Assembly: GCF_964188315.1 (NCBI RefSeq)
Contig: NC_135659.1
Location: 51,832,001 to 51,896,000 of the forward strand
From: Podarcis muralis
Lineage: Eukaryota
Reading direction: 5' to 3'
Length of the DNA: 64,000 nucleotides
Of the stretch, positions 11,501 through 32,535 are shown in pieces (position 1 is the stretch's first letter; each line of letters starts with the position of its first letter). The notes beneath the pieces are model-generated. The model did not search any database, was not told the origin of the DNA, and saw only the letters and a list, made by a program, of their open reading frames with translations. Made by a program: the position numbers and the translations under genes.

Positions 11501-14500
11501 ATGCCAGTGGCACAAGATGGAAGAATCTTTACAAAGCCCTTTGTGTGTTCCCCACTGGAGACTGCACTGGGAGCCAAGACTATGTATGGCTTAGACACCC
11601 CACTCCTGTGTTGCTTCTTGACCTTCTCTTGAGGGTCCCACCTTTTTATGCTATGCCCTTCCCACCAAGTTCTGCCACAACTGTTGTTTGATCTGCTTCA
11701 CTCCTTGCAATTACACAGAGCAAAATGTGCCATAGAAATTATATCTGTACCCAGAGGAAGTTTGGAAAGAGACTCTTGCCCCTCCTCGTCTTCATGATTG
11801 TGGTACAGGCCAGACTGGGAGACAGCTGGTGGGGAGAGTTAGAAGGTAGAATACAAGCTGCTTGGGTCCATCTGCACACATTTTCACACAATGCCATCCC
11901 CAGCTTCCCTTCTGTCTCTGCAGTGAGTTTACTGTTCTCAGACACAAGGTCTTCTGTTATATCTGCCTTCCAGACACCTGCAACGGATACCTGTAACCCT
12001 CTTGTGCCTTCTTCCCTCTTACAATATTTGTGCAAATAAAAAACCTAATAGAGCAAAAACTTACCGAAGTTGAGAGGCTACCTCACTGATATGGGCAATA
12101 TTCAGTTTATTACAGAACGATTCCAGATTAGCGGTTCTGGAGAATAATGGCCTAAGGAAACAGAAATTGGGTGAGACTTGCATTTTCCTGTCACCAGATG
12201 GGCTTGATGCCTGCAACTGGGCATTCCTGCACTAAACAAAGCTTGAATGGGACACTGGCACAAGGATCAGGTAACAGAAATTGGTTGGGGATGTCAGTCA
12301 TTTTCTTTCCAGGACCCCTAGTCTCTTTCAATGAGTTGTACTCCCATCCTCTCTGTATGGCTGTCACAGGACAGGGATTCATCAAACTGAACTAGCATGC
12401 TTCTTAGGACTCAGACACAGAACATTAAAATCACAGACCATGCCCCAGTAGAAGCAACCCTCATAATAGGAGAGGAAGCATAAACTACCCAATCATGGTC
12501 CTTCAGCCCCATCCTAACCACAAACAAACTACCTAGAGTCTCTTGAAAACTCTCCAAAACTACTTTAAGGACAACAATGTGGACGACATTGCAACCCCAC
12601 TTCTCTAGGACACAATGAAAGTGGTCATCAGAGGAGCGTACATAAAGGAGAGGACATCCCTTAAAAAACAAACTTCCTCAAAAATTGGTAAATTAGAACA
12701 AGACATTTCAACCTTGTCATAACACTACAAACAAACAGGAGCCTTAAATTCATAGAACAAAAAAGAAGGGAAACTGACTCTCCAGAAATCAATAAAACAA
12801 TGATTAACATCCTATACCCTAAACAATGCTTTTACGAATATGGAGGGAAGAACTCCAGACTATTAGCGAACAGATGTGGGGGGGGGGGAATCACTCAAAA
12901 CAAGTATACACTGTGTCACTATAAAAGACAGTAGTGTTAACATCCTCCACCAAAGAAATAACCTCAGAATTTTATGCCAACTTATACACCTCCCGCAACC
13001 CACCTGAACAGGAAATCAGAAGATTCCTAACAGGGCTGACCATGCCAACCATAACTGCAGAGGAACAAAAATTCATGGGGACACCATCGAAAACATCCCC
13101 GCAACAGCACACCCATTTCTCCAAAACAAACTATAGTAAATCCCCACAACACTGATGCAATCAAACAACAATGGGAGCATGATATAGGCTATGAAATTAA
13201 CCCCACCCAATGACTAGAATGTGGTCTATACCTCCCTTTAAGTCCATATCAACCAAAAGAAGGGAACTCACTCTGAAACTCACCTACAGGTGGTACTTAA
13301 CACCACAGAAACTGGAGCTGATATGCCCAGGAATCTCACCAAGATGTTTGAGAGACTGTACCTCCGCATACCAACCTGCTCTTGGTTTCTTCAACTAGAT
13401 ATAAAAGGAAAGCATACTAGGGGTGGGATTCACCTACATCTCTGTCAGTGGAAGCCCTGCACAAAGATTTCTGCTTGCTCAGTGAGTCTCCCCTCCCCAC
13501 CCCATTGATATTGCCCCATCTTTGCTGGCTAAGTCTGTAATTTCACAGCTTCTCTGACTTAACATTAAAGGTTCTATCCAAAATGGACACTTATAATTTA
13601 AGTGGGCACACCACTGCCAATTCTACATATGAATAATATGCATATCTATATAAATAATACAAGCACATTTCTAGATTAATACCACTATGGGACTGAAACC
13701 AGCACGGAGGCCAACTCATTGCAAGTCCCCGCTCCTGGAACTTGTATGAGGATCAAATGAGATAACAGTGATCAGTCCCAAACTGCCCATAGATGCAAAA
13801 AGAACCAATCACTGCTAGGTTGCTAAGTCTATGGCATATGGCACTCTGGTGTTAGGCTTCCTACAGACAAAATCAGTCCTGGATTCTGAGACCTCCTGTG
13901 GTGATACAGTTCATGGTGTTCCGGGTAAGAACAAGTCACAGCCCAGAAGCTCATTGTGTGGAGGCTGCAGCTTCCTTCAGTCTTACCTGATTAGGGCACT
14001 GCTCCCAGATGAAGACTGACTATTGCCAGCATTTGCCTTCAGTGCAAAGGTGACCACATGAGGGCTGTATTTAGCGATGGCACAATCTTGGTTCCTGTGA
14101 AGCAGAAAACGTACAGCCATAAGGCAATTGTTCATCCCCAGTCTTTGGGCTGACAAGGACAAGAGAAGACCAGTTGGTGGCAGTGCTGGGTCACAAAACC
14201 ACCCAGTAGCTGGAATGAATAGAAGCCTAAAAGGAAAAACAAGCTGGACTAAAGAGCCCAGTGAGGTCCAACTGTCCATACAAAGTAGACCACAAAAGTA
14301 GTTTGACACAGAACCAATAGAACACATACTGTATTGTGCGGTGGGGAGACTGAGGCAAAAATTTGATGCCACCCCCCCCCCCAGTCCTTGCCCTGCCTTC
14401 CCAAAGCCAGCTAAGTGAGACAACAGGCTTTGGGAGGGTCCTAGAGCACTCCAGGGAAGCAGCAATTAGGCTTTGGGCAGGAGACAGGAGGACTCTAGGA

Positions 14501-17500
14501 CCCTGCCAGAGCCTTTACACCTCCTTCCTAAGCCTAGTGCCTTGCTTATCTGGCTTTGGGAAGGCAGCATGAGGGTTGGGGAAGGTGTCAAATGTTGCCC
14601 AGGGCCAACAAAACAGGCCTTGAGGGCTACATGCAGCCCTCAGGTCATTCATTGGACCACCCAGTTCTAGGCAGCACACAGGGAGCCATGGCCTGTGCTC
14701 ATGTCAATGTAGGGAAATTCAACAAGAGGGGAGCTATTTGAAAGTAAGTAAACAAATGCAGAATTTCAGGTTGTGACTGAGAGATAGTAGAAAGGTTTGA
14801 AGGGTGTGAAGGGATTCTCCTATATGGCAACATGGTACAAACAACTCCAGCAGGAGGAGTTTAAGAGCTCATCCCTTACTAGCCAGCCTGTTCTAATCCA
14901 TGCCTTCACTGAGCTATTCATTGGTTACACAGGGCTAAGGCAGGGAGCAAATCCTCAGGCAAGGGTTCCAGCAGGTGCTGATCCCAGTGCTCACTCGGAT
15001 GAATGCTCACTTTGAACTTGGAGGTGGGACATAATCCCAGCCTCAGGCTATGGACTGAACACACCATAAAAAACAAACGCATTAGCAGGACTGGCATTCT
15101 TGATAGAGGCGCTCAGCAATGCGATTCCTGCATGATGTAAGGGAGCTAAGTGGGAATGACAAAGGTTGAGACCCAAAGAATGGGAATGTAAGGCTGGAAT
15201 TAATTATACATATAAAAAAGACTAGAGAGACACACAAACTGACAAGCTGCACTTGAATGGGAGCGCAAGTTACAGATGGAGGTGTATGGTGCAAACATGT
15301 GTTTGGCACAGGTTATTTTTGCTGGACGTTGGCCATCTGAGTGGCAGTCATGTTGAAACTATACTGGAACTGCCAATTAAATTGCATTGGAGCTGATATT
15401 TCCTAGTAAGCATTTCTGGAACAGTCACCCTTAAAAGGCAAAGGGAGAAAGAATACTGTGTCAATAGTGTAAATATATAGTTTAGTCGCTAGGTGGCACT
15501 GGACTTATTTATATCTGAGTGGAATCAGAGGTTTCCCCCATCCTGTTCTTGTTAAGAGAGACAATCAAGTTATTGTCTAGCCTCCTAACTGATTTGTCCC
15601 ATGAAACTCTAAGCCTCTCGTAACAAATAGTTATGGCTTCCTCAATCTAGACTGCTTTGGCCAAAAGATGATGTAAAACTCACCCATTCCACACACATAA
15701 ATACCACCAGCCACATCAGTTGGAAACTAATGGGCTCATTCTTATATCAAATAGGCTTCAGGTCTTAATATAGTCTGCTTGTTTTTCTTCTATCCCTACT
15801 ACCTGCTCCCCCTCAACTCAGCCCTTAATTCTCTCAAGTCCCTTCTCTTCCAATCTCCAGTACCTGCCCTCCTGCGATGCCTTCTGCTGTAGGCCAATTA
15901 GAAGAAGGCGGATCTCCTCCCTCACCAGCTCCTTGAGGTTGGGGGGAGCTGCCAGCAAGGCCCAGCTGTCATCTGCTTGCAGTGGGCTTTGCTCCACTCC
16001 AAGGCGGCCTGACTGCAACTCCTGATGTAATTCCAACAGTGTCCGCACCTGTAAATAGGGAAGGGGTTGGACTGCATTAGGGACAGTGCATTGCCACATG
16101 CAGAAATTCACACATGTGCACATTGACACAAACTGCAGTAACTTTCTCAAAGTAATCTTTCCCCCACCCTCCACCTCCCCAAATGATGAAGCACTGACAC
16201 AACCTAAAAATACAAGTTGCACTCCCATTCCCAGTATTGGTATTCTGCACACCTGGAAATCAAGCCAGGTGCCTGCCTGCAAGAAAAGAAAATCAATACC
16301 TAGCCATGGGTTAGTTACTCATCTGATGGTAGACAATTACATTTCATAAAGGCCACAGTCAGGGAACTGACAACTTTTCGGAAGTATGTCATCCATCAAG
16401 GGAATAAAAGATGCTTCAAATGTGATAAATGTGTGTGAGAGCACACTGAATTCAGTAAAACGTTGCATCTGCCCAAAAACTGGGAACAGTCTATGAGGCT
16501 ATTAGTTTATGTAAAGAGTATTTTAGGATTAAGAGTGAAGTTTTTAGGTTTTAAAAAAACAACTCTTTTGCAGAAAGTGGGCAAAGTTGTCTGCAGAAGA
16601 TAAGAACACCAGCCAGGACACTGTCATTCCAATGTAGCTGGCAAGAGGGCACTGCATTGTTGCTGTCTGTACACTCCATAAAAGGTGCAAAGCTGCAGAC
16701 AGCCCACCCACAATCATTCTCTCCCTCCCCCCATGAGGAAAGTCAAGGTCATGCCGCAAAAATATCTGCAGGATATTTGTAAGGCAAGCGAGCGCCAGAA
16801 ATCCCTTTCTGGCCCCACACATCCACAAGAGGAACGTTATGCTACAGCTGCTTCCCTGGGCGGCCTCTCAGATATCCAATTGAGGAGGGGAGCAGAGACA
16901 CATACAAGAACACAGCAGGGAGACAGGCAGTACCTGGGCCACATTTATCAGGCTTGTGATGAAGAGGTAATAGACATCCAGGTGAGAGACCCCATAAAGG
17001 CTGGGGAGGGGTCACTGGTCACAATGTTGGGGGGGGTGGATCTCAAGCAAAGCTCTAACATGAAGAAGTGATAGAGAGAAAAAGGTGCCATCTTGTCAGG
17101 GTGTGCTGTGCTTGCTCTTCTGGTTTCAGGAGGAGGTAAGGCAATTACCATGTGAAAAGCCTCTGGGATGTTTACTGTTCTTCTCAGCTGCAGTCAGGAC
17201 CATGCTGAATAAAGAAAGGGCATGAATGGCTGGAGGAGAACAAAGGGCCTGGAATAGCATGGATTAGGGGCTCTGGCCAAGCATTAGGAACCAGCTGAGC
17301 TGGGAGCTGGCAAATGGGGGCCTTGTCAAACAGGGAGGGGGTGGTTGCAGTATTTTATCCCCTCCTTGACTTGCCTTCTCAGATATGCTTTCCTTTCACT
17401 GAAATCAAACAGCACTCAAAGCAGATGTAAGTGGCAAACCAGAGGTTTTTTCCATACACACATGAACGCTACTCTATATGAAAATGCATGTATGCCAAAA

Positions 17501-17967
17501 CTAGTGGCCAGTGCTCAGTGGAAGGGGGCTTAATACAATTTATAAGCCCTCCCTTAGCGCCGCTCAATTTTAGCACTCAGTCCACTCCACTCAATCTATA
17601 GACATGAAAGGCGGGCCCTTTCATCAGTCAAATCCCCTTACAAATTTAGTGCTGCCTCTTTAGCTGATGAGAGCTAGATTTTATGCTTTATTCAGATATC
17701 CCTTTGTCACCAGCCACTTCTAAATTGTGTAGTAAGAGGGGTGGTTGGTTGGTTTGTTCTGCTCTTTTGTGAATCATTTTGAATAGGAGATCCAGTATTT
17801 CGGTACTTAACCTCAGCATGAAGTTCCAAGCTCCGTTCCACAAGGCCATGACCCAAGATAGCTTTCGCCTCAAGCCTCTCACTGGGTGCTAATTGTTCCT
17901 CTACCATTGTCCAGAGTGATGGTACGGACTGCAAGGGTTCCCCAGATGCACCAGGCAAGGGCAACAT
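8563..17967 (-). CDS. CCDC24: Coiled-coil domain-containing protein 24 (383 aa predicted)
   Basis: Minus-strand exons 17967-17812, 16048-15864, 14094-13987, 12151-12065, 11082-11028, 9717-9648, 9438-9318, 8932-8563 sum to 1152 nt with consistent phases. Motifs PSLWTMVEEQLAPSERLEAKAILG..SLELHAE, LLAAPPNLKELVREEIRLLL.GLQQKA..EGR, KYSPHVVTFAL, LNIAHISEVASQLR, LLEDECCDLER and ELQEEKRAMERDLQ match remembered CCDC24. Position next to SLC6A9 is syntenic. Confidence 0.92.
12500..13400 (+). mobile_element. Degenerate L1-type LINE fragment with internal deletion
   Basis: Frameshifted ORF2-like peptides: YFKDNN..MKVVIRGAYIK, EFYANLYTS..IRRFLTGLTMPTITAEEQ, then directly the C-terminal QWEHDIG..KLTYRWYLTPQKL..PGISPRC. 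Confidence 0.7.
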
Positions 17968-18342
17968 GGGTGCTGTATCCGATTCCACGATAATGGGCTT
18001 TAAAGGAAAAAAAGATTGTGACAATGAGACAGTGAGTAGAAGCTCCACATCACAACTATTCGGTGCCACATGCAATGGTGCACCTAGGTAATTTTAGACA
18101 CTGAACTTAATGGTTTTACACATGGGCTGCTGCCCTCCCAAGATTCACAAATATTATTGAAAAGCATTGAAAGTATTCAATTATCTGAGGTTCTGCCCCC
18201 CCCCAACAGAAACCTGGCCCCCCGCAATGTCCTATTTATGAGGTATTTTTACCCATGATTTCCCAAGAAAAGCTCAATAACTTTGTCCCTCCCCAACTAA
18301 AATCCTGGCCACATCCATGGTTTTACACCCCTCTCCCATTAG

Positions 18343-19716: not shown

Positions 19717-19887
19717 ATAGCCCCAAATGTAACCTATTGCCCATTATCCCTCCCCATAGTTGCTCCCCAGTGCTTAAGTCACCTACGTCTCGGCCCACCG
19801 AGCCCACTTCCGCCCCAGACCTTTTACTCTCCCCACACTTCCTCACTCCCTACGGACTCACGGACACAACTCTGCGGTAGCCCTCAC

Positions 19888-19990
19888 CTGCGACACCGGG
19901 CGGAGGGGCGGAGGGCCAGGCGCCTTGCCCTATCCGAGCCCCCTCCACCCTCTAACTCTCTGGAATATAAACTCGCCGTCTCCATGGTAA
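19888..19990 (-). other. CCDC24: Probable non-coding first exon of CCDC24 (5' boundary approximate)
   Basis: Minus-strand donor CAG|GTGAGG at 19888/19887 inside a CpG island. The next exon has acceptor tttttcctttaaag| at 17998/17997, 30 nt upstream of the ATG. Confidence 0.6.
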
Positions 19991-19991
19991 C
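19978..19991. promoter_or_regulatory. RFX X-box motif
   Basis: GTCTCCATGGTAAC fits the X-box consensus GTNNCC-AT-GGNAAC and lies at the inferred CCDC24 start region. Confidence 0.7.
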
Positions 19992-20717
19992 GCCCCGCCG
20001 CGTTCCTCTGAAGCCTCGCCTCTTAAAGGAGCCGTGCCCACGAGGCAGACAGGATGTCGATCGAGCGTGGAGACGGGCGTCCCGGGGGAAGGAAGCGTGC
20101 GCGTTGAAGCTCTTGGCGCGCCCGCGCTTGCACCCAAGCAATCGGAGGTAAAGAGAAGCCACACGTCGGCCAGTTTTCATCCAGGAGGGGTCCCACTGGC
20201 TTTACGCTTTGGCAACAGTACAGTATTGAGAAACTTCTTTCTTTGCCTATTAATGTTCCTAGGATTAAGATGGGGGAGGGAGACATCCAGAGCCGCGCGT
20301 GTTTTGGAGGCCGCGGAGACTGGGAACTGGGGAGACGCAACTTTCGCTGCCCGGATGAGTGTTCGAGGGGTCTGGAGAGGGAGCACAGTGGACTTGTCTT
20401 AGCAGGCTTTTCCTGAGGTGCAGATAGGGGGCCAGGTCCCTCCCACCGCCCCGGTCCCGCCCGCTCCGTTGGGGAGGGGGTGCTGTGCCCCTGGGCGGGC
20501 TCGGGTTGCAAGAAGGGGCGGGCCGGGCCGGGCGGCGGCTGCACAAAGGCCGAAGCACGCCAGGGCGGTTCTTAGCCGCAGCTTCAGCAGGCAACCTCCC
20601 GGCGGGACCCCGCGGGCGGCGTTGGGGCGGACTGGATGCCCACTTTCCCCGCCAGCTCTCCTCCGCTTCGCTTCCCTACCGCTGCTGCTGCTCTGCTCCT
20701 CCCTCTCGCCAACTCCC

Positions 20718-23700
20718 ATGCCCGGCATCTGTCCCTCGAGTCCAGCGATGCCCTTTCCGTTGGCACAGCTGAGCTTAGCGTTGCTGCTGCTGACTCTGGT
20801 GCCCGTCCCAGGACTGGCAGGGCCAGTGACCACGTGCGATGCCAACGGGAGCCTGTACTACGTTGGGGAGTGGTATTTCCTGGACAGTGACCACTGCACC
20901 CAGTGTGAGTGCACAGCGGAGGGGCCGGCCTGCGCCCGCACGGACTGCACCGCTCTGCCACCTGCCTGCATTCACGTCAGCCACTACCCCAGCGACTGCT
21001 GCCCACGCTGCGAAAGGGTTGGCTGTGAGCACCGTGGACAAGTGTATGAGCTGGGGCAGCATTTCCAGGTAAGGCATTCACGGGAGAATTAGGCAAAGGG
21101 GTGGCATGGGGTGGCATGAGAAGTAATCTAGAGCGAGGTGGGCAGGGATGGATATGTGATGGATGGCAAAGTGAGGATATTCAAAAGCAGGAGAAAAGGC
21201 GAATGCTCCTGAAAAAGGCACTGTCTAAGAATCGCAACCCGTCACTTTTGTTTCTTAAATCTTGTTCTGAAAAGGAGGCCTAGGCAGGAGAGTAAGAGAC
21301 TGGAAGCAGGAATGCTGGCTGTGTCTTTATAGTTTGTTCATTACTGGCTGAAGCAAAAGAAAAGACAAACAAAACTAATAAATTGCATTTTTCCAAAGTG
21401 GGCGAGAAGCACCAAATCAAAAGTGCTCTATGAAGCTGGAGGTGCTCTTAAGATGTTCCCATAAAACCTCTTTGATAATTCAGAAGGCAATTTTATTGGC
21501 TGTAGTACCTAGCTGAGCATCCTTTGACTAACTGAATTGCATTTTCATCCATTTCTTAGGCCTGACATTGACCAGTTCAGCACCTTGCTTCTGGCTTTTG
21601 TCTGTTGCTGCCAAAAATGTGTGTAGTTTATTTTAGGACTTGAGTCAGACCAAACAATCTCTAGCATGGCTGACTTGGACAATTGAGGGTGGGTGGGGAA
21701 AGGAGTATTTTTGGCACTAAGCCTGCACTAGCCGAAGGGAGTCAAATTCTGGCCCTGAGGCTGCAGGTGGAAGATCAAAGCCCTCTATTCCTGGGCTCCA
21801 TGCCTCTTTGGATAGCATGAATTGAGTGTTTGCAAAAAATAAGTGTATTGATGAAGAAAGGACCAGTTACTACATATAGTCAAAGAATGGGCAGTGGGGT
21901 TCTTCCTAGGTGAATTGCCCGTTACCTAAACATCAAATTATTGTGTGTCTGTTTGATGACTTATCTCTTGGCCTGTCCCATTTACCCAAACACAAAATTC
22001 TATTGAAAGGTACACAGAAAGTAACTGCTTTCTGCAAAGCTATTTGTTGTTGTTTAGTCGTTTAGTCGTGTCCGACTCTTTGTGACCCCATGGACCAGAG
22101 CACGCCAGGCACTCCTGACTTTCACTGCCTCCCGCAGCTTGGTCAAACTCATGTTGGTAGCTTCGAGAACACTGCCCAACCATCTCGTCCTCTGTTGTCT
22201 CCTTCTCCTTGTGCCCTCCATCTTTCCCAGCATCAGGGTCTTTTCCAGGGAGTCTTCTCTTCTCATGAGGTGGCCAAAGTATTGGAGCCTCAGCTTCACG
22301 ATCTGTCCTTCCAGTGAGCACTCAGGGCTGATTTCCTTAAGAATGGATACGTTTGATCTTCTTGCAGTCCATGGGACTCTCAAGAGTCTCCTCCAGCACC
22401 ATAATTCAAAAGCATCAATTCTTCGGCGATCAGCTATATTGAACCATAATTTCCCCCCAAATAATAACTTTATTATGGCCAGCCAAAATATCATAAAATA
22501 GCAAGCAACCTTTTGATTATCCAGAACCATTCAGCTGGGGCCTAACTTGCCCTAAAATACTTTGCTCATCCAAACCTTCACAGTTCTTTACTAGGGATGG
22601 CCAGATTTTGCTCTAGGTCCAGAGCATCTGGGTTGTGGATACAGTAATATAGGGCTGCTTCCCAGCACCGCCTGGAACTAGGTTATCTTGCATTTGCTTA
22701 CAAGCAAGACAAGTGCTGTAGATCTAGAGAGAGAAAAGTTCTGTAATTAGGAAGGGTAAACACTTTCCTTTGTACTGTAGGTTTGTACTAAGAACAAGAT
22801 ATCAACTTGCCAGTGAAGTTGTGCAATCTCCTTCCCTGGAGTTATAAAGATGATCATGGATGATTGTATTATTAAGATGTGATTTTTGGTGTTAAATGTT
22901 GATGTCATCTTCCAGTTTCGTTATTTTAAAGTATTGTGACGAGTGATCTAGAGCAAGTGACCAATGTTTTCATTTTCAACCACTTGAAGTTCAGTGAAGT
23001 CCAGTCTTCATCATCACCCACCCTGAAGGTGTGAAATCAGATAACCAACCTATTAGTTCAGGAGGGAGGGAATTTGACAGAAGGTAGAATCTTGGAACTT
23101 TCCCCTTAGGGCAGAGATCAGAGGCATGTGGCTTGGCTAGAATTAGCCTCATGTTTCGCTAGTGAGAAGGCAAATGAGCGGCGAGGTGCTGAAAACGACT
23201 TCAGTATCCTTTGCTGGATATTTTAAGGAGGAGCTTGATTGGTTAATGGGTTCCAAAACACATTCATGGGCCTTTTTAGCATATTGGGATCCTTGATGGT
23301 TCTGCACTACTGGGGAACAATCTCTCACTCAGTTTTCTCTATTCAACATTTTCTTATGACCAGTCAGTTTCCCCAGTGGCCAGCCGCATGATTATTTGAG
23401 AGTAATCTTGAGTTGGCCAGAGCTGACAAGATACACAAAGTCAAGGGAGATTGGGACAGAAGCTTTTTCTCCCTCGTTATCTATCAATTCTTGGTTGATA
23501 GTGCCATCTGATGGTATAATCCCAGTACTGCCATGGCTATGCATTCAGTTTGGAATGCTTCTTCACACAAAAAAAGGAAGATGATGGGCCTTATATTTCT
23601 TTTGTGATCACCCCTTCCCCTGATACTTAAAGCACAGGTACAGGTAAGCAAAGATGCAGCCAGGAGCCTAATCCAATTAAGTATCTGAGGCATGAGTTTC

Positions 23701-24939
23701 CCACCTGCTTGCATACGCACATCTCTTTGCAAATTACAGACAGAAGACATGACTAATTCATTCTGGAACCGCAAAATCCAGTCAATTCTGCAACATGGTG
23801 GTGTGGGGTGGATGGGTAACCTATTTCTCTCAGCCTAATTTTATTAGGAGGAAAAGGGGGAGGGAAACAGGGTAGCAGAGGAGGTGCCCTACCCACTTTG
23901 ACTCTGGACCAGCACACCACTGGCATGCAATTCTGAACAGATTCCCAAGGGAATGCAATTCTCAGAAAAGAATAAGCTTCTGCACCACTGATGCAAAATA
24001 GTTCTGGAGCTGCATCATCATCATAACCGTGTGCTGTCCACGTAAAGCTGCCTTGCAATATTGACCAATATTTGTCTCTCACAGCCCTCAGAGTGTGAGC
24101 AGTGTACCTGTGACCTAGATGGCATCGCTCGTTGCCTAGTGGCAGACTGCGCCCCTCCGCCCTGCGTCAATCCAGTCTACGAGAAGGGCCACTGCTGCCC
24201 CACCTGTGAGGATGGTGAGAAAGACACACCTTCACAGCAAGGGACAAATGTTCCACTTCACGCTGTCCAGAAGGGGGAGAGAACTTTGTCTCCCTCACAG
24301 TTCAGGGGCCCTGTCCTAATGGAGCTGGGAAGTGAGAGGAATTGGGCCAAGCTGACCAGACACAACCTTGCTTAACTGAACAGGAAGCCTCATACTTAGA
24401 AATGATGGTGGGACACCTGGTAGCCCCCACTTCATCTTGAAGGATTTGGCAGGTGTTTAGCCCTAGTGTTAGAAGAGGGGCTCCCCCCCCCCCAAAATGA
24501 AAAATGTCTTCCTGGTACAAAAGCAGCCTCTAGCACAGAACCTGTGCATGAGGTGAGCTCCCAGTAGAGGATAGGGGTGCAAGGCTGGAGTAATAATAAT
24601 AATAATTTTATTATTTATACCCCTCCCATCTGGCTGGGTTGCCCCTACCTACACATGTACTCTTAAAACTGCTTGCTATTTCTGCTTCTAAGATTCATGA
24701 AGGGACTTCTGCAAACAATGGCAGACTCTAATACATGGACATGTCTCTCCACAGGGCCCAACTGCTACGTGGATGGGAGCCAGCGACGCGTAATTCCTGC
24801 TGGGGAGAGCATATGGGTGGGGCCCTGCACCCGTTGCCGCTGTCATGATGGCCAGGACGCCGGTTACTGGGAAGGAAACAGATTAGCTAAATGCGAGCGG
24901 CTACGGGGATGCCGGGCTACAGGTGCACATCACACCTGA
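20718..24939 (+). CDS. Secreted von Willebrand factor C domain protein, Brorin (VWC2/VWC2L) family paralog, 221 aa (211 aa from the second ATG at 20748)
   Basis: Exons 20718-21068, 24085-24214, 24755-24939 (666 nt, canonical GT-AG, in frame). Signal peptide (AQLSLALLLLTLVPVPGLA), two complete 10-Cys VWC modules (C..CxxCxC..C..C..C..CCPxC) and a third 6-Cys truncated module. Exon junctions HFQ|PSECEQC and CED|GPNC mirror remembered VWC2L junctions EFK|PSPCEWC and CKN|GPNC. Confidence 0.93.
22044..22434 (-). mobile_element. RTE-BovB LINE, 5'-truncated 3' end
   Basis: Uninterrupted peptide ADRRRIDAFELWCWRRLLRVPWTARRSN.SILKEISPECSLEG..KLRLQYFGHLMRREDSLEKTLMLGK..WRALVHGVTKSRTRLND* followed by a (CAA)n tail; this is the typical BovB C-terminus. 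Confidence 0.93.
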
Positions 24940-25185
24940 GCTGCTCCAAACACCAAAAAATTCCTGGGCCAGTCATTCATCAGCACTTGCAAGGTTTCTG
25001 CTTAGCCAGACAAGCCCTAGTGTGCCCTTACACCCAGCCCTGGCCCAACTCCTTCAGCCATACACATAAGCAATTGCCAGTCGCAGAACGCTTTCCAGAT
25101 CTACCCTCTTTCCCTTGACAATGTCTAGAGTTATTACGCAGGGGAGTAGCTCATATGAGAAAGCCTGTTTTATTTAGCATGGGTG

Positions 25186-25301
25186 GGCAACCTGTGGCTA
25201 TTCAGATGTAGTTGGACTCCCAGCTCCCATCAGCTGTAGCCAGCATGGCTAATGGTTAGGAATAATTTAGCCACATCTCGAGAGCCAGAGGTTCCCCATA
25301 T
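25186..25301. mobile_element. Palindromic hAT-type MITE in the VWC gene 3' UTR (diverged)
   Basis: ggcaacctgtggc..cagatgtagttggactcccagctcccatcagc..ccacatctcgagagccagaggttcccc; boundaries approximate. Confidence 0.6.
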
Positions 25302-25407
25302 GATTTAGGGAATCACCCCTCAACCACCACCACATTCCCACTCCAGCTTCAACTAAACATAGCATCTTTTGCTACTATTTAACAGTTTTTCTCTGTGTGT
25401 GAACATC

Positions 25408-25413
25408 AATAAA
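25408..25413 (+). terminator. Poly(A) signal of the VWC-domain gene
   Basis: AATAAA about 470 nt after the stop codon, followed by T/GT-rich sequence. Confidence 0.6.
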
Positions 25414-25688
25414 ATAACCTTGTAGAATAGTTCTCTCTTGTCTTCTGGGCTGAGTAACTACGCCCAGAGTTTCCTGGGCCAGAAAACCCAGTCCCTGCTT
25501 TAAACAAACTTGTTGGGGAAGCACAATGAAGTGCCATTCATTTGGAAACGAATTTAATTCTTCATTTTGTACCTTGCCGAGATGAGCACAAGGAGGGGAG
25601 GCTGCAGATTGCATAAACCTGCAGCGTTGCCCCTATCCACAGACCCCACCTGAATCCCATAGGCAAGGAGTCTCCCAAGTTTTGAAAC

Positions 25689-25694: not shown

Positions 25695-27062
25695 GAATAC
25701 AAAAGTCTGATCGTAGTGACCAGTGCTGCATTCACCATAGGCTTGAAAAGGGATCAAAACATTCAAATGTACAAAAGTCACCAACACCTGGGCTGTGCAA
25801 CACGCTGGTGCCTGGCTTCAAGCCTGGCCCAGCTGCCACCCCAAAGTGGACCAGCGCAGGAGATTCTACCTGCCAGGCACCATAACCAGAGATGAGGGAT
25901 ACCAGCAGCTTCCTAGCTCCAGGAATTAGGCACACGGCCACCATGTGTCATGAGCAGACGGTCGGACCCAGGGGCCTGGCCTCAGGTGGTGGCAGATGGC
26001 AGCTTGACAAAGAGGGCACGATGAGTGGTCAACGGCAGGTTGCCTGGCAGATGGCGGGAAGGTTGATTGGTGAGTGAGGGTTGGTATGGGGTAAGTGGGT
26101 TGGAGGTGAGAGGTAGGGGACAGGCAGCAAGAAGCCAACTTCACCTTCCTCTGTTCAGTAGCTATAGGCCCATCGGTGCCTGTAAAAAAGAGAAGCCAGC
26201 CCACACCAGAGAGTAGGCCTAACCATGCCATTTTAATTCCACCCTTGCTGAGAAGTGAAGCACACACTGCCCAACCAATATTCCCCATTCACAGACAGAA
26301 GAGCAAACACTGCTAGGAAGAATGACCTGTTGTCCCTTGACAGACAGGCTACCTGTCACACTAACCCAGGAAGCACTCAAGTATTCTAATGAGGGTTTTG
26401 TATAAAACGCCCCTGTGTTACTGGAGCCAGAAGTGACACCCAGGGCCCAGCAGGGGGACAGCACCAAGCCATGAATGGAGGTGGGCAATGGCCAGCCCCA
26501 TGAGAGCTTCTCCTTTGGAAGAGCTTCTCAGCTGGGCACGAGTGAACCACCTGGACACCTTGCGGGCTGGCATTTGTCGTAAGGCCAGGCCACCCCCTGG
26601 AAGGAAGGCTCAAACGGCACTCTTGCACACTGAGAGGAAAGGAAAACAACTACCTGTACTGCACTTCCGGGATCCTTAAGGGATGCCGCTCTGTGAAAAG
26701 TTCTGGGAGAGGATAGGGAGGTTCAAGAACCTGCACAAGGTTTCTCTGCTCTCAGTGCCTTCCAGCCAGGAGTGGGGCTTGGCTGTGCCCAGGACCCCTA
26801 AGCGCTGCGCCAGGCACCATGACACACTCACACTTCCTCCCCAACCTGTGAAGGGCACTGTGGAGAACTGACTAGTGATCAGGAGATGGGCTTCAGCCAA
26901 AGGCTGGGGCAAGGCGAAGGTGTAGTCTTGGCCTTTCCCGCATCCCCACAAAGGAGGCAGACAGCTCCTCCAAGCCAGGACACAGTCCTCTGAACCAGTC
27001 AGGGCTGGGATCCGCACAGCTCCTCATGCATGGGGCCATGGGCAGAGCCAGGCAGCAAACAG

Positions 27063-30000
27063 TCAGCCCCGAGGGGGGCGTGGTGGTGGGCGGCCAATCT
27101 CCACGGTTACATTGGTGTACATGGGACGACGAACCACCTCCACCAGGCGGTACTGAAGCGAGCCAATGCCATCGCGTTTCATGGTCACCTTGGTATTCTG
27201 GATTTTGGTGAACCTGCCAGGAGAACCAGAGAAAAATTCATCTTACACATGAAAGTAGGCAGTTAGATTAATTCAAGTTAAACCTACAAGCCATTCCTCG
27301 ATGAATGGAATAGAGCAGGCTTCCTCAAACTTGGCCCTCCAGATGTTTCGAGACTACAATTCCCATCATCCCTGACCACTGGTCCTGCTAGCTAGGGATC
27401 ATGGGAGTTGTAGGCCAAAAACATCTGGAGGGCGGAGTTTGAGGAAGCCTGGAATAGAGAGTTGAATGACAGCTCAGGCCACTTGGAAGGATTTTGGGTA
27501 GAGCCTTACGTGACATCCACGCACAATAAAGCAATTTCTTATGTCAGATTTCCAGCATACAAAGCACTGTGGGACTTCCGAAATGAAATTGTGTCTTCTG
27601 AACACATGAATGGACAGTCACCAAGCACAGCCCTTCCAGGTTGAAAGTCCCAAGTAACAGAGTGAGCTTCTCTACCCAGAGCTCAGCTTTAAAACAACAC
27701 TCCCCGTCAAATGATATAGCAAGGTTGCAAAGTGTGATGGCGTCATAGGATCCTGGAGGGCCATGGATGGTGACTGCATTTAGTTCTCATGATAGGTGAT
27801 TACTACCACCACACAACCTTCTCAAGTGGAATGTCATGAAATAAGGTTTAGTGTATTGCTCTGAAACCATGCCAGCTGTGGCTTTTCTCTGGTTCCAGAC
27901 AATAAATGTTAGGGCACAGGACAGGAGTCTCTTTCTCTTTCCTTGCCTAGAACTAGCAGAACATAGATTTAACCAAACACACCTGGTGCATGATTGGGAC
28001 TCTGATTCATGTCTGTGTCTCTTAGAAGTAAGAGGCAGAGAGTGGAATTAAAACTGGGGGTAGGTCAGAAAGAGGGATGCACACACAGTAATAGAAAACA
28101 CTGTCTGGGGGAAGGCTAAGGACTTGTAGGCTATCTTGGTTTGTCTCATGGACATTCTACAGGGAGGCAAACAAATGTGGCCCCTCTCTCATAAGGTGTA
28201 GAGTAGTATGCTATAAAAGGGAAGAGGCGTCTGGAAGATTATTTTCCATTGGAAATCAGGCTTGAAAACCATTATGTGCCCAGGGAAATGGTGCAGAAAT
28301 TGTGTGGGAGCTTTCTATCTCCTTATGTAGCTTGCAATGGACTAGGTAGGGAGCTAGCAAGCACATTGTCTCTCTCACCGCTGGGGATTGGGCTCGTTGT
28401 GTCGGTCACGCTCGTGCTTGATCATGCGGTAGCGCCCAATGCGGGCATCAGGACGTGACACTTTCATGCCATTAAGCGAGATCCTGTGCAAAGAAAAAGT
28501 GCAGCTCAAAGACCAGCAGACAGGTCGGGGGCAGACTCTAAATAAAGCAGGAGTTAGTCCTCACCCTCCAGTCCTCAGCACCCCCAACCCCTTCTGGCTT
28601 TCAGAGTATTGGCTCCCCAGGCCTTCTATTTGGCCCTGCCTGTTATGTGCTGCGGAATACCTACCTGCCTATGTCCTCCTCTCTCAGATTTGGGAGCATT
28701 GTTATAGAAAAGGCAGGTGTTGCATATTGCCACCTGCCATTTGCACAGCTACCCCACCCCAGAAGAGGATGCTGTTCCCTGCCACTCAGCACATTCCCAG
28801 GAGACACCACATGGAAAAACAGACTACATGGCTACTACAACCAACTTGCAGAGAACAAGTTCTGGCTAGGCTTGGCCCAGCCTCTCACGCACCGGTTAAA
28901 GATGTCGTCATCTTCCCCACCCCAGCCCCAGTACTCGTTAGGGAAGCCATTGATCTTCAGAAACTGTGTCTTGCTCAGGCCAGAGACACCTCCGAAGTAG
29001 CCAGAGTATGGCAGCCTGCAGAGGACAAGCAGGAGAGATGGGAATCAGTCAAGCCACGAATGGGTTCAGGAGCACAGAACCTGGGTGGTCCAAGCTACAC
29101 CTGACACAGTCTAAATCCCAGTTTCCAAATCAGCCATGTGATGTCACCCATTGCTCACACTGCATCAGGTCTCTCCTAAATCCTTCCCATTTCCCTTCTC
29201 CTTAGCTGGAATGCAGGATTCCATTTTATACACACTGTACCTCCTCCCTCTCCTTTTGCCATGGTTGGCAGGTAAGAATATAGGCAACACAGAACATTCA
29301 CGTGGGGATCCTGTCTGTTTACATCACCTTCATATAGGTTTTGCAAGCGCCCATTCCATAATGTAGTATCACAAGGACTTCCCTGGAGCATTTCATCTAG
29401 TCATATAAGAGGCAGCAAAGTTTAAATTAGGGGTGTGCACCAAACAGAAGATTCAGTTTGGACCTGGATTCAGTACTTCAGAAAACAACATGCCTCAGTC
29501 CCAAGTGCTTCAGAGTCTGAGTTGGGAAAAACAAGATTTCATTTCCCCTCATTCACTATTGGGTTGTTGTTGTTTTTTAAGCTATACCTTTCCCCCTTTT
29601 TACAGTGGATAAAATTTGCAGGCACATTAGCTAATCCACAGTGGATTCAGCCAGCCACATAGTTCCAGGGTGGGGCTTTTTTCTGTCAGGTACCTTTGAA
29701 ATTTGATGGATATTTTTCTAAGGAAACTTTTCCCCCTCCCCCACTATTGGATGAAATTTGCAGGCATCAGAGGCTCCATGAAAGATGAATCCTGTCAAAT
29801 TTCTGAACGATAGCTTCATTGGTTTTCCCACAAGGACAGCCTTCACAGTTTGGGGATGGGTAAAAAGTGTCCACTTAAACTTCCCATGTCTTTTGAGGGC
29901 AATTGTTTGGAAACCAGACATGAAAGAGGTTTCCCTAGGTATGAAACTTGCCAATGGCAGACAAATTGGTCCAATTTTTGTGAACTAGGGACTTTTAATC

Positions 30001-32535
30001 TTGGGAGTCAGGGGACAGAACTAAAAAGGATTTCCTTTCCTCCTCACAAAGCACTGGGGTTGAAGACTCCAGGTGAAGTCATTCCCTCTGATTACAAGCT
30101 TGACCGGTCAGTCACAGCAGAATCCTGCCCCCCCCCTTACCCTGGCATTTGTTCTACTTCAGCCATTCCACACCCCTTGTGTTTTCCTTATACACTAAAG
30201 TTAGCTACATTAGTTTTGCTTTCAGCAGACAATTGTCAGAGTTTTCACAGTGCCATGAGGCACTTTGGGAAATCCCCACTTTGTCTCTGGATCCCTGAAG
30301 AGGTTCCACTTTGTCTCGGACAATCCCAGAATCCGTGCAAAGCACCCTGCTTTGGCTTGGGATTCATCTAAAGCTGTTGTGTATCCCCACTTTTAAGTAA
30401 AAAACCCCCTGAAAATTATGAAGAAATGTGACATGGTAGTCTTAAGAATGGGGGAGGTTCCTGTACTGCAATCTAGATAAGAAACACATTTCACAGCTTG
30501 CAGGTCCCCACAAGGTCCAAGCCACACAGAATGAGAGCACACACTGCAAAAGGGATATTTCTCCCCATATGGTCTCCAACAAGGCAGTTTCAATTATGCT
30601 ACATTGGCAAGGTAAGTTATGTGTGCAATAAAGTCATATATTCCTCCTTCCATTTTGCCTCTGACACTCTGAACAATTTCAAGGGGCCACTGGCATTTCA
30701 AAAAAGATCAAAGTGCACAAACTCACCGGAAGCCAAACTTATCCATGGCAACAGCAAAGTGCCGGGGTTGGTCATAACAGCGATAAAGATTCCGGTCATC
30801 CATGGGCACCAGGTCAACGTCGCTGAAGATGAAGCAGTCATAGCTCTCATCATCTCGAAGGGCTTCTAGGAAGCCCACATTCAACAGCTTAGCTCGGTTA
30901 AAGGTGTCTTCACCAAACTGTATGGAAAGATCATGAAGGACAGGATCACATCAACTGCCACGACCCTCTTACTCTTACCTGATGCAGCTGGCCAAACTCT
31001 CTCTTGTTACATTTCATTGTGAATAACATTCTATTTTTTCCTATTTTTTTCTAGAACTGTTTTATCTCCCTTTATAGATCTTGCAAAGTCCCACCAACTG
31101 TATTTCAGGTTTATTGTCATGTCAAGAGAGCAGGCCTGATTTTTTAAAATGAGAAGCAAGTGAGAAGCATTTGCATCACATTCCACACTTACCATAGGTG
31201 CAAAGTTCATGGTGCATTGTAAGGCCCACACTCTGCTTCCCCCACAAAGCAGGAAGCCTTTGCTTCTAATCAGAACAGAGAGGCATATATTCATGAAAAC
31301 TAACATACCGCTTTCCCTAATCAGGTTCCTCTCAATTGAACCGGATGGCACTATGTTCTATACCCAACCATCTTGCTCTCTTCCGTATCTGTGGTGCCAT
31401 TAGGACAGAACTTTGGGTCAGATATCCAGGCCCTACTCCTTCTGCTTTGGAGCACCGCAGGGCTGGAACACCATATTTTGAAGTAATGCAGATTACCATC
31501 TGAAGGGGATGCCCATGAGACCATTCAGTCCAGAATGCTCAATGACCCAAGTGCACCACTGCCCCCACATTATCATTCTCTACGCACCTGGTTAATTATA
31601 TAGATGCCGTAAGACACCTTCTGGCGCCGTAGAATCGGGTGCAGGTAGTGCAGCCAGTACTTGAGGTGGTGCTCCCGGTGCCGGAACGGAATGAGGATGG
31701 CCACCTTCTGGCGAGGCACACAGTCTGGGGGAGAATACTTGCCGCCCTCCCGCACATCTGGGTTTTCCCGTTGCACCCGCTCCATGCTCATGGGAGTGCT
31801 GAACTCGATAAGGAGCCGGCCCACTGCAGGAGAAAGGACTCCATTATCTATGCATCAGCCACAGCCTCTTGACTTACACAACAGCTCATGTCCCTTTCAC
31901 TAGCCAAGTTGCCAGGGCACTGCCCAGAAAAAAATCAGCAAAGAAACCTAAAAACCGAAACATGTATCAAGCATAGAGACAGCAAACAGTCAAAGCAGAG
32001 TTAACTCGAATACCCAGCTAAGTGATTCAGAGTTAACAGGAAAGGTTGTTGCTCGTTGCAGATCATTGTTTAATAAAAGTTTTAGCCCCAGTTAAATATC
32101 AATTCCAAAGCTTGTGCTTCAGCTCTTTATTCACCTGTCAGGAATAAGGGTATTAAGTTCTCTGTGCCTTAAATGTTTTGCTCCCTAGGGTGAGGAGATT
32201 GTCTATTCTGGTCTTCACCAACCAGGTGCTCTCCAGATGTTTTTGCGCTACAAGTTTCATCAGCCGCAGCCATGTTGTAGTCCAACACATCTGGAGGGCA
32301 TCAGGTGAGTGAAAGCTGGTCTACTTCATGCATTCATTAGAAGAGATCAGCATATCAGATGTATCAGATGTAAAAGTGATAAATAACTACCTGACATTCA
32401 GAAGACATCTTAAGGCAGCCCTGTTCAGGGAAGTTTTTAATCTGTGATATTTTAGTGTATTTTTGGTTTCTATGGAAGCCGCCCAGAGTGGCTGGGGAAA
32501 CCCAGCCAGATGGGCGGGGTACAAATAATAAATTA

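What the first reader, a model, noticed from the sequence alone, without database searches (positions are those of the whole stretch)
20718..24939. Third Brorin-family (VWC2/VWC2L-like) secreted protein gene, apparently absent at the human locus
Seen: an intact 3-exon gene with signal peptide, two full 10-Cys VWC modules, a 6-Cys third module carrying a GQDAGYWEGNRLA insert, an N-G-S sequon, its own CpG island and a poly(A) signal. It lacks the acidic ..DDYRGKG pro-segment that precedes the first module in VWC2/VWC2L. Known: VWC2 (Brorin) and VWC2L are neural secreted BMP antagonists and AMPA-receptor complex constituents. From memory, they lie at other loci and human B4GALT2 and CCDC24 are directly adjacent. 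Inference: a distinct, largely uncharacterized paralog kept in non-mammalian vertebrates (I recall similar fish sequences) and lost in at least eutherians. It is usually hidden under a generic 'VWC2-like' label. This is the best candidate for an undescribed system in the window.
Basis: partly seen in the sequence, partly recalled or inferred. Interest (0 to 1): 0.75.

Follow-up and report, generated by a model that had tools for sequence, protein, structure and literature searches.

The report
Lizard ortholog of uncharacterised Brorin-family gene
This is a real, expressed lizard gene for a small secreted cysteine-rich protein: an old, well-conserved but unstudied relative of the BMP antagonists Brorin (VWC2) and Brorin-like (VWC2L), found from lampreys to reptiles but in no mammal or bird protein set searched.

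Summary
A 3-exon gene on the + strand (20718-21068, 24085-24214, 24755-24939) has both introns confirmed by spliced RNA, a CpG island and a used poly(A) signal. Each exon matches one Pfam VWC2L module.

It is the lacertid ortholog of a gene databases label only "VWC2-like" (zebrafish-derived name zgc:113531). That gene occurs in squamates, turtles, amphibians, lungfish, gar, teleosts, sharks and lampreys. It lies in the same CCDC24 / gene / B4GALT arrangement in two lizards and pike.

Trees put this clade outside the clade that holds VWC2, VWC2L, a fish-only group (si:dkey-283b1.7) and two cyclostome lineages. An AU test rejects grouping it with VWC2L (p 0.004).

Selection is purifying: dN/dS is 0.05 between two lizards, and lizard and lamprey are 78% identical. 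No mammal, bird or crocodilian member appeared in two word searches of 5.8 billion proteins, but the mammalian locus was not examined.

One detail is wrong: the "GQDAGYWEGNRLA insert" is the homologous segment of VWC2, only 2 residues longer.

Function is inferred, not shown: probably an extracellular binder of BMP-type ligands. The gene is an uncharacterised member of a known family and is already annotated, so interest is moderate.

The parts
19800..21100 (.). CpG island spanning the 5' end of the gene and the interval towards divergently oriented CCDC24
   Evidence: GC 0.64 and CpG o/e 0.72, against 0.21 in intron 1 and 0.27 window-wide
20718..21068 (+). Coding exon 1: start codon, hydrophobic signal-like N-terminus, N-G-S sequon, first 10-Cys VWC module and the start of the second
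   Evidence: Translation. Pfam VWC2L_1st 1.8e-14. 96% identical to Podarcis and 94% to Phrynocephalus. RNA depth and joint.
21069..24084 (+). Intron 1 (GT..AG), which holds a highly repeated element at about 22040-22540
   Evidence: Joint 21068|24085 in RNA runs X24 and X21 and in a spliced contig of X1
24085..24214 (+). Coding exon 2: the rest of the second 10-Cys VWC module
   Evidence: Translation. Pfam VWC2L_2nd 4.7e-10. 89% identical to lamprey.
24215..24754 (+). Intron 2 (GT..AG)
   Evidence: Joint 24214|24755 in 8 reads of X21 (5 start places) and in a spliced contig of X1
24755..24939 (+). Coding exon 3: 6-Cys C-terminal module and TGA stop
   Evidence: Translation. Pfam VWC2L_C 2.1e-17.
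24940..25429 (+). 3' UTR with AATAAA at 25408
   Evidence: X1 contig covers 24754-25429 and ends there. Signal position.
13969..18039 (-). CCDC24 exons (synteny anchor, head to head with the gene)
   Evidence: Collinear tblastn with the Phrynocephalus locus L001. Pfam CCDC24 1.8e-11 for 15845-16051.
26974..31827 (-). B4GALT-family exons (synteny anchor, tail to tail; taken as B4GALT2 from its linkage to CCDC24)
   Evidence: Collinear with L001. Pfam Glyco_transf_7N 1.8e-31 and 1.7e-20.

Best explanation
Shown: the window carries an intact, transcribed, correctly spliced and selectively constrained gene. It encodes a protein of about 210-220 residues with a signal-like N-terminus, two 10-Cys VWC modules and a 6-Cys C-terminal module. 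It is the lacertid ortholog of the vertebrate gene that zebrafish-derived annotation calls zgc:113531. This gene forms its own old branch of the Brorin family, present from lampreys to reptiles and held in the CCDC24 / gene / B4GALT arrangement. It is sister to the clade that contains VWC2, VWC2L and a fish-only group.

Inferred: the protein is secreted and N-glycosylated. It acts outside the cell by binding BMP/TGF-beta-type ligands through its VWC modules, most likely the first. That would limit or shape BMP signalling, as shown for Brorin, Brorin-like and Crossveinless-2.

Inferred: the gene was lost in the mammalian stem and perhaps in archosaurs.
For: - Gene model and expression.
- Domains.
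- Orthologs at 60-96% identity in squamates, turtles, amphibians, lungfish, gar, sturgeon, teleosts, sharks and lampreys.
- Synteny: the same arrangement in the window, Phrynocephalus and Esox, with B4GALT downstream in Emys.
- Trees and AU test.
- Constraint: dN/dS 0.05 against Phrynocephalus and 0.08-0.12 against turtle, pike and lamprey. Lizard and lamprey are 78% identical over 184 ungapped residues.
- Fold: AF2 model of the Phrynocephalus ortholog has pLDDT 85.7. It matches NEL tandem VWCs, collagen IIA VWC (rmsd 2.6, 33% identity), CCN3 VWC and CV2 VWC1 bound to BMP-2.
- By sequence, the only solved relatives of the clade profile are the CV2 VWC1 chains 2mbk and 3bk3, the latter from the BMP-2 complex, at E 2e-4.
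- BMP antagonism of Brorin, and its likeness to CV2, are reported in PMC5407822.
Against: - No binding or signalling data exist for any member of this clade. No paper in the library mentions zgc:113531.
- It is only about 40% identical to VWC2 and VWC2L.
- It lacks their acidic N-terminal segment and DYRGKG motif. It also has different Cys spacing in module 1 (CxxCxC against CPCxC) and a shorter linker.
- At most about five residues precede Cys1 after the likely signal cleavage. In CV2 an N-terminal clip helps grip BMP-2 (my recollection of the 3bk3 work).
- VWC modules also bind other partners: VWC2L bound CD36 in a screen (PMC9578707).
- Tissue of expression is unknown because run labels were coded.
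Confidence: 0.55

Rival explanations
1. It is a secreted VWC protein whose main partner is not a BMP. It could be a synaptic or AMPA-receptor-complex component, like VWC2 and VWC2L, or a ligand of another cell-surface receptor.
For: Conservation is high across the whole mature protein, 78% between lizard and lamprey, which would fit a specific conserved partner. VWC2L bound CD36 in a receptor screen. The clade lacks features of the Brorin N-terminus.
Against: The nearest solved sequence relative is the BMP-2-binding VWC1 of CV2. Every studied member of the family antagonises BMP. There is no evidence here for neural expression.
Confidence: 0.25
2. The gene is not truly lost in birds or crocodilians. 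It is merely missing from assemblies and annotations because the locus is GC-rich.
For: The turtle ortholog has an odd, GC-driven residue make-up and is poorly modelled in several turtles. GC-rich 'hidden' bird genes are a known problem (my own knowledge).
Against: Hundreds of annotated bird genomes and many transcriptome-derived Logan proteins gave no avian hit.
Confidence: 0.25
3. It is a translocated or fast-evolving ortholog of VWC2 or VWC2L rather than a separate paralog.
For: It shares the Pfam architecture and the three-coding-exon layout.
Against: Trees separate it with 100/99 support for the rival clade. The AU test gives p 0.004. A lacertid has its own brorin (P0328). Lampreys and sharks carry both kinds. 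Synteny is conserved from pike to lizard.
Confidence: 0.02
4. It is a decaying or non-functional gene copy that merely looks intact.
For: None beyond low read depth in two bulk RNA runs.
Against: The frame is intact, both junctions are spliced in RNA, dN/dS is 0.05, all 26 Cys are kept, and exon-intron positions are conserved in lizard, turtle and pike.
Confidence: 0.01

Closest known systems
[quoted passage not shown]
   Same: Same clade, same three modules, same signature stretches (ANGS sequon, VADCAPPPC, GYWEGNR) and same CCDC24 / gene / B4GALT microsynteny
   Different: Nothing material; the window gene is a member. The group has no descriptive name and no published function in the library searched.
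Brorin (VWC2) and Brorin-like (VWC2L), neural secreted BMP antagonists
   Same: Pfam VWC2L_1st, VWC2L_2nd and VWC2L_C architecture. 10 + 10 + 6 cysteines. Small secreted protein. Coding region split by two introns.
   Different: About 40% identity. No acidic N-terminal segment or DYRGKG. CxxCxC instead of CPCxC in module 1, two extra residues before the CC of module 1, and a linker two residues shorter. Separate clade and a different locus. BMP antagonism untested.
si:dkey-283b1.7 group (fish, coelacanth, sharks)
   Same: Another Brorin-family paralog hidden under the same generic label
   Different: It belongs to the VWC2 / VWC2L side of the tree as sister of VWC2, keeps DYRGK, and was not seen in tetrapods.
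Crossveinless-2 (BMPER) VWC1, the BMP-2-binding VWC module (PDB 3bk3, 2mbk)
   Same: Nearest solved relative of module 1 by sequence (E 2e-4). Same VWC fold (TM 0.55 by target).
   Different: CV2 is a large multi-VWC protein with a VWD domain. Only one module is comparable. The stretch before Cys1 is much shorter here.
Single Ciona gene labelled 'VWC2-like' (P0132)
   Same: Shares with this clade the CxxCxC spacing, the short inter-module linker, VADCxPPPC and YW.G...A.C
   Different: 38% identity and a long N-terminal extension. Used as outgroup.

Membership tests
Brorin family (Pfam VWC2L_1st + VWC2L_2nd + VWC2L_C architecture) | All three family-specific modules present, in order, above Pfam gathering scores | tested here: met
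   53.8, 40.0 and 63.2 bits against a cut-off of 27, one module per exon
Brorin family (Pfam VWC2L_1st + VWC2L_2nd + VWC2L_C architecture) | Two 10-Cys chordin-type repeats plus a 6-Cys tail | tested here: met
   Counted in the translations. All are aligned with VWC2 and VWC2L cysteines.
Brorin family (Pfam VWC2L_1st + VWC2L_2nd + VWC2L_C architecture) | N-terminal signal peptide / secretion | tested here: inconclusive
   A hydrophobic stretch followed by small residues is seen by eye. The ortholog model has a low-confidence helix at 12-26. No signal-peptide predictor or secretion assay was available.
Brorin family (Pfam VWC2L_1st + VWC2L_2nd + VWC2L_C architecture) | Binds BMPs and antagonises BMP signalling | not testable with these tools
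   Known for Brorin and Brorin-like only (PMC5407822)
VWC2 or VWC2L orthology | Falls inside the VWC2 or VWC2L clade | tested here: not met
   Separate clade. AU test p 0.004 against a union with VWC2L.
VWC2 or VWC2L orthology | Acidic pro-segment ending in DYRGKG before Cys1, and CPCxC spacing in module 1 | tested here: not met
   Alignment
zgc:113531 orthology group | Clade membership of its closest full-length proxies and high identity of the window's exons to them | tested here: met
   Exons are 94-96% identical to Podarcis and Phrynocephalus. Phrynocephalus sits in the clade. The window's exons were not joined, so the window protein itself was not placed on the tree.
zgc:113531 orthology group | Conserved position between CCDC24 (divergent) and B4GALT (convergent) | tested here: met
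   Window, Phrynocephalus, Esox, and partly Emys. The shark loci gave no DNA and showed no neighbour within 10 kb.
Chordin-type BMP-binding VWC modules | VWC fold | tested here: met
   AF2 model pLDDT 85.7. Foldseek hits to collagen IIA, CCN3 and CV2 VWC domains and to NEL.
Chordin-type BMP-binding VWC modules | Direct ligand contact through an N-terminal clip and subdomain 1 | not tested
   Only about 3-5 residues would precede Cys1 after signal cleavage. No complex was modelled.

The most novel reading that the evidence does not exclude
This clade is the conservative, ancestral-type half of an early vertebrate duplication of a single chordate Brorin-like gene. It keeps features also seen in Ciona. 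It has a non-redundant, still unknown extracellular partner, possibly not a BMP, that constrained it to about 78% identity between lamprey and lizard. Mammals, and perhaps archosaurs, dispensed with it while keeping the derived VWC2 and VWC2L copies.
Probability: 0.2. Interest if true: 0.65.

Novelty: new member of a known kind. Interest (0 to 1): 0.42.

Why it matters
BMP modulators of the Brorin family are studied almost only through the two mammalian genes. The family also has an older, strongly constrained branch present from lampreys to reptiles. That branch is absent from the mammalian and avian protein sets searched, has no descriptive name and has no published function in the library searched.

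This branch offers a tractable zebrafish gene (zgc:113531) for asking what the ancestral protein did. It is also a clean candidate case of lineage-specific loss of an extracellular signalling regulator. It is not a new kind of system. The gene is already predicted in public annotations, and its mechanism is likely conventional.

Tried and rejected
- Earlier findings of this scan, by place and by words, returned nothing.
- Paper searches for zgc:113531 in several spellings found nothing relevant. A search for gene-loss or ohnolog papers on VWC2/VWC2L also found nothing relevant.
- The ESM Atlas gave only family-level neighbours.
- The shark loci returned no DNA and no neighbours within 10 kb.
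- P0053, an unnamed hit, first seemed a possible bird, crocodilian or mammal member because it fell among amniotes in a small tree. Cluster look-up showed it is lamprey. The placement was a GC-composition artefact.
- The first AU run did not finish and was resumed.
- Two Pfam calls failed on frames with stop codons and were corrected.
- Rejected readings: translocated VWC2 or VWC2L ortholog, pseudogene, and a 13-residue insert in module 3.
- The spliced protein of the window was never assembled. Full-length work used the database orthologs P0005 (Phrynocephalus) and P0377 (Podarcis). The joined step was left out.
- No human sequence or contig was fetched or compared.
Full report
**1. The observation**

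The window has no N runs. On the + strand an open frame starts at ATG 20718, with a second in-frame ATG at 20748 in a better Kozak context. It runs to a CAG|GTAAGG donor at 21068/21069. It resumes after a polypyrimidine-AG acceptor at 24085 and leaves at 24214 (ATG|GTGAGA). It resumes again at 24755 and stops at TGA 24937-24939.

The three pieces carry 10, 10 and 6 cysteines. Each piece alone passes the Pfam gathering score of one Brorin-family module: VWC2L_1st 1.8e-14, VWC2L_2nd 4.7e-10 and VWC2L_C 2.1e-17.

The 5' end lies in a CpG island. At 19800-21100 GC is 0.64 and CpG o/e is 0.72, against 0.27 for the window. An AATAAA lies at 25408.

Full-length analyses used database orthologs instead.

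**2. Expression**

Public runs labelled with the same species as the DNA holders of this stretch were laid on 20600-25450.

- The joint 21068|24085 (GT..AG) appears in two bulk RNA reads (X24), one single-cell read (X21) and a spliced contig of X1 at depth 21.
- The joint 24214|24755 appears in 8 reads with 5 start places (X21) and in a spliced X1 contig at depth 70.
- That contig runs to 25429, just past the poly(A) signal.
- In X1 the exons stand at depth 21-70 and the introns at 0-8.

The model is therefore transcribed and spliced as read. Tissue is unknown because run labels were coded. The X1 contig over exon 1 continues 299 letters beyond the laid stretch, so the 5' UTR starts upstream of 20600.

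**3. Identity and range**

A word search with exon 1 gave 65 hits. A second search used a profile of 20 full-length hits, alignment A1, and gave 115 hits. Every named hit is called 'VWC2-like', 'brorin-like', 'VWFC domain-containing', 'hypothetical' or similar, or Zgc:113531.

The named hits come from these groups:
- squamates (Gekko, Phrynocephalus, Candoia, Thamnophis, Pituophis, Pseudonaja)
- turtles
- frogs and caecilians
- lungfish
- gar and sturgeon
- many teleosts
- sharks and rays

A cluster look-up added Podarcis muralis. It also showed that the unnamed hit P0053 is the lamprey protein (Petromyzon, Lampetra, Lethenteron).

The window's exons are 96% identical to Podarcis and 89-94% identical to Phrynocephalus. 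Exons 1 and 2 are 84% and 89% identical to lamprey, against 34-56% to VWC2 or VWC2L. The genome is therefore a lacertid close to Podarcis.

No mammal, bird or crocodilian appeared. All unnamed transcriptome-derived hits sit nearest to fish, squamate, amphibian or lamprey sequences.

**4. Synteny**

The window is collinear with the Phrynocephalus locus. CCDC24 exons lie on the - strand at 13969-18039 (Pfam CCDC24 1.8e-11). The gene follows on the + strand. B4GALT-family exons lie on the - strand at 26974-31827 (Glyco_transf_7N 1.8e-31).

The called genes show the same order and orientation in Phrynocephalus and in the pike Esox lucius. In the turtle Emys the B4GALT gene is downstream. The exon boundaries fall at the same codons in lizard, turtle and pike.

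A human GWAS paper lists B4GALT2 and CCDC24 consecutively in the chromosome 1 cluster with nothing between them (PMC6813133). I did not examine any human sequence.

**5. Place in the family**

The exhaustive profile search of the 1.84-billion-protein library was justified because the claim rests on absence of relatives. With a third word search, run with alignment A2 of first hits from that side, it supplied the comparison set:
- VWC2 and VWC2L
- a further group named si:dkey-283b1.7, here 'D', found in teleosts, gar, bichir, sturgeon, coelacanth and sharks
- two lamprey/hagfish lineages
- one Ciona gene

Two maximum-likelihood trees (LG+C20+F+G4) gave the same picture: 61 rows, and 43 rows with lamprey added. 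The window's clade is monophyletic, at 98/98 and 90/76. All VWC2, VWC2L, D and the other cyclostome sequences form a second clade at 100/99, on a stem of 2.1-2.3 changes per column. Inside that clade VWC2L is sister to VWC2 + D.

The AU test rejects a clade of this gene with VWC2L (lnL difference 18.2, p 0.004).

Lampreys have members on both sides. The split therefore predates the cyclostome-gnathostome divergence. With Ciona as the only outgroup, it is compatible with the first vertebrate genome duplication. That dating is inference.

The tool warned that long branches meet at the root, so the root position is not secure. The separation of the two clades does not depend on the root.

**6. 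What distinguishes it**

- The mature protein starts about 3-5 residues before Cys1. The acidic segment and DYRGKG of VWC2, VWC2L and D are absent.
- Module 1 has CxxCxC where the Brorin side has CPCxC.
- Module 1 has two more residues before the CC.
- The inter-module linker is two residues shorter.
- VADCAPPPC replaces VSACPQTEC-type sequences.

Ciona and an unnamed non-vertebrate-like sequence (P0134) share the spacing, the linker and the VADCxPPPC / YW.G...A.C features. In these respects this clade looks ancestral and the Brorin side derived. P0134, however, keeps a YRGGK motif, so the loss of the N-terminal segment is derived in this clade.

**7. Constraint**

Counts were summed over separately aligned exons.

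| Comparison with the window | dN/dS | dS |
|---|---|---|
| Phrynocephalus | 0.05 | 0.75 |
| Turtle | 0.12 | - |
| Pike | 0.09 | - |
| Lamprey | 0.08 | - |

The last three comparisons are near synonymous saturation.

Full-length identities are 78% for lizard against lamprey, 72% against pike, 66% against ray and about 40% against VWC2, VWC2L or D. VWC2L is as conserved or more so among jawed vertebrates, so the conservation is strong but not unique in the family.

**8. Mechanism**

An AF2 model of the Phrynocephalus ortholog, built on alignment A3, has pLDDT 85.7 and shows beta-rich modules in series.

Foldseek finds the tandem VWC region of NEL/NELL2 (E 1e-6). It also finds single VWC domains of collagen IIA (rmsd 2.2-2.6, 33% identity), CCN3, and CV2 VWC1 in its BMP-2 complex. 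By sequence, the only solved relatives of the clade profile are the CV2 VWC1 chains 2mbk and 3bk3, the latter from the BMP-2 complex (E 2e-4).

Brorin inhibits BMP2/6 signalling, and its repeats are reported as most like those of CV2 (PMC5407822).

The best-supported reading is therefore a secreted, N-glycosylated VWC protein that binds BMP-type ligands and tunes their signalling. This step is inference.

Three things argue for caution:
- The stretch before Cys1 is very short.
- The Brorin N-terminus is missing.
- VWC proteins are known to have other partners, for example VWC2L-CD36 (PMC9578707).

**9. Novelty**

The gene is predicted in many public annotations, and its domains are in Pfam. 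No paper in the 8.4-million-paper library names zgc:113531.

What is added here:
- It forms a separate, old clade that includes lampreys.
- Its microsynteny is fixed from pike to lizard.
- The family has four gnathostome groups.
- Mammals and birds appear to lack this one.

That makes it an uncharacterised member of a known family, of moderate interest.

Noticed in passing
window 22040-22540 (- strand ORF 22054-22530), inside intron 1: A highly repeated element. RNA and contig depth there is hundreds to about 100,000-fold, with many loose ends. From memory, the 158-aa ORF resembles the C-terminal end of a Bov-B/RTE-type LINE ORF2, which is common in squamates. This was not tested against a repeat library.
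   Followed up: partly
window 25716-25926: A block between the gene's poly(A) site and the last B4GALT exon is 85-94% conserved with Phrynocephalus in several frames, which means DNA-level conservation. It is probably B4GALT 3' UTR or a regulatory element.
   Followed up: no
P0377 (Podarcis muralis UniRef model), matching window 24082-24372: The public Podarcis protein model reads through the exon 2 donor into intron 2 and so lacks the third module. In this window's RNA the 24214|24755 joint is used and depth is zero at 24326-24649, so that model is probably a mis-annotation.
   Followed up: partly
proteins P0167, P0344, P0350, P0352, P0342, P0354: A further Brorin-family paralog group (si:dkey-283b1.7), sister to VWC2. 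It is present in teleosts, gar, bichir, sturgeon, coelacanth and sharks, was not seen in tetrapods, and is also hidden under 'VWC2-like' or 'brorin' labels.
   Followed up: partly
proteins P0116-P0127; P0116 and P0117 named: Very long proteins carry 13-30 matched stretches to this clade's profile. Examples are the Acanthaster 'zonadhesin-like' protein (3329 aa, E 5e-146) and a Seison protein. They out-score true VWC2 and VWC2L against the clade profile.
   Followed up: no
trees: The turtle (Emys) and lamprey members have a deviant, GC-driven residue make-up. In a small tree this pulled the lamprey sequence into the amniotes. It is a warning for any phylogeny of this locus.
   Followed up: yes
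window 24582-24619, intron 2: A short AAT-type simple repeat that the read tool skipped.
   Followed up: no
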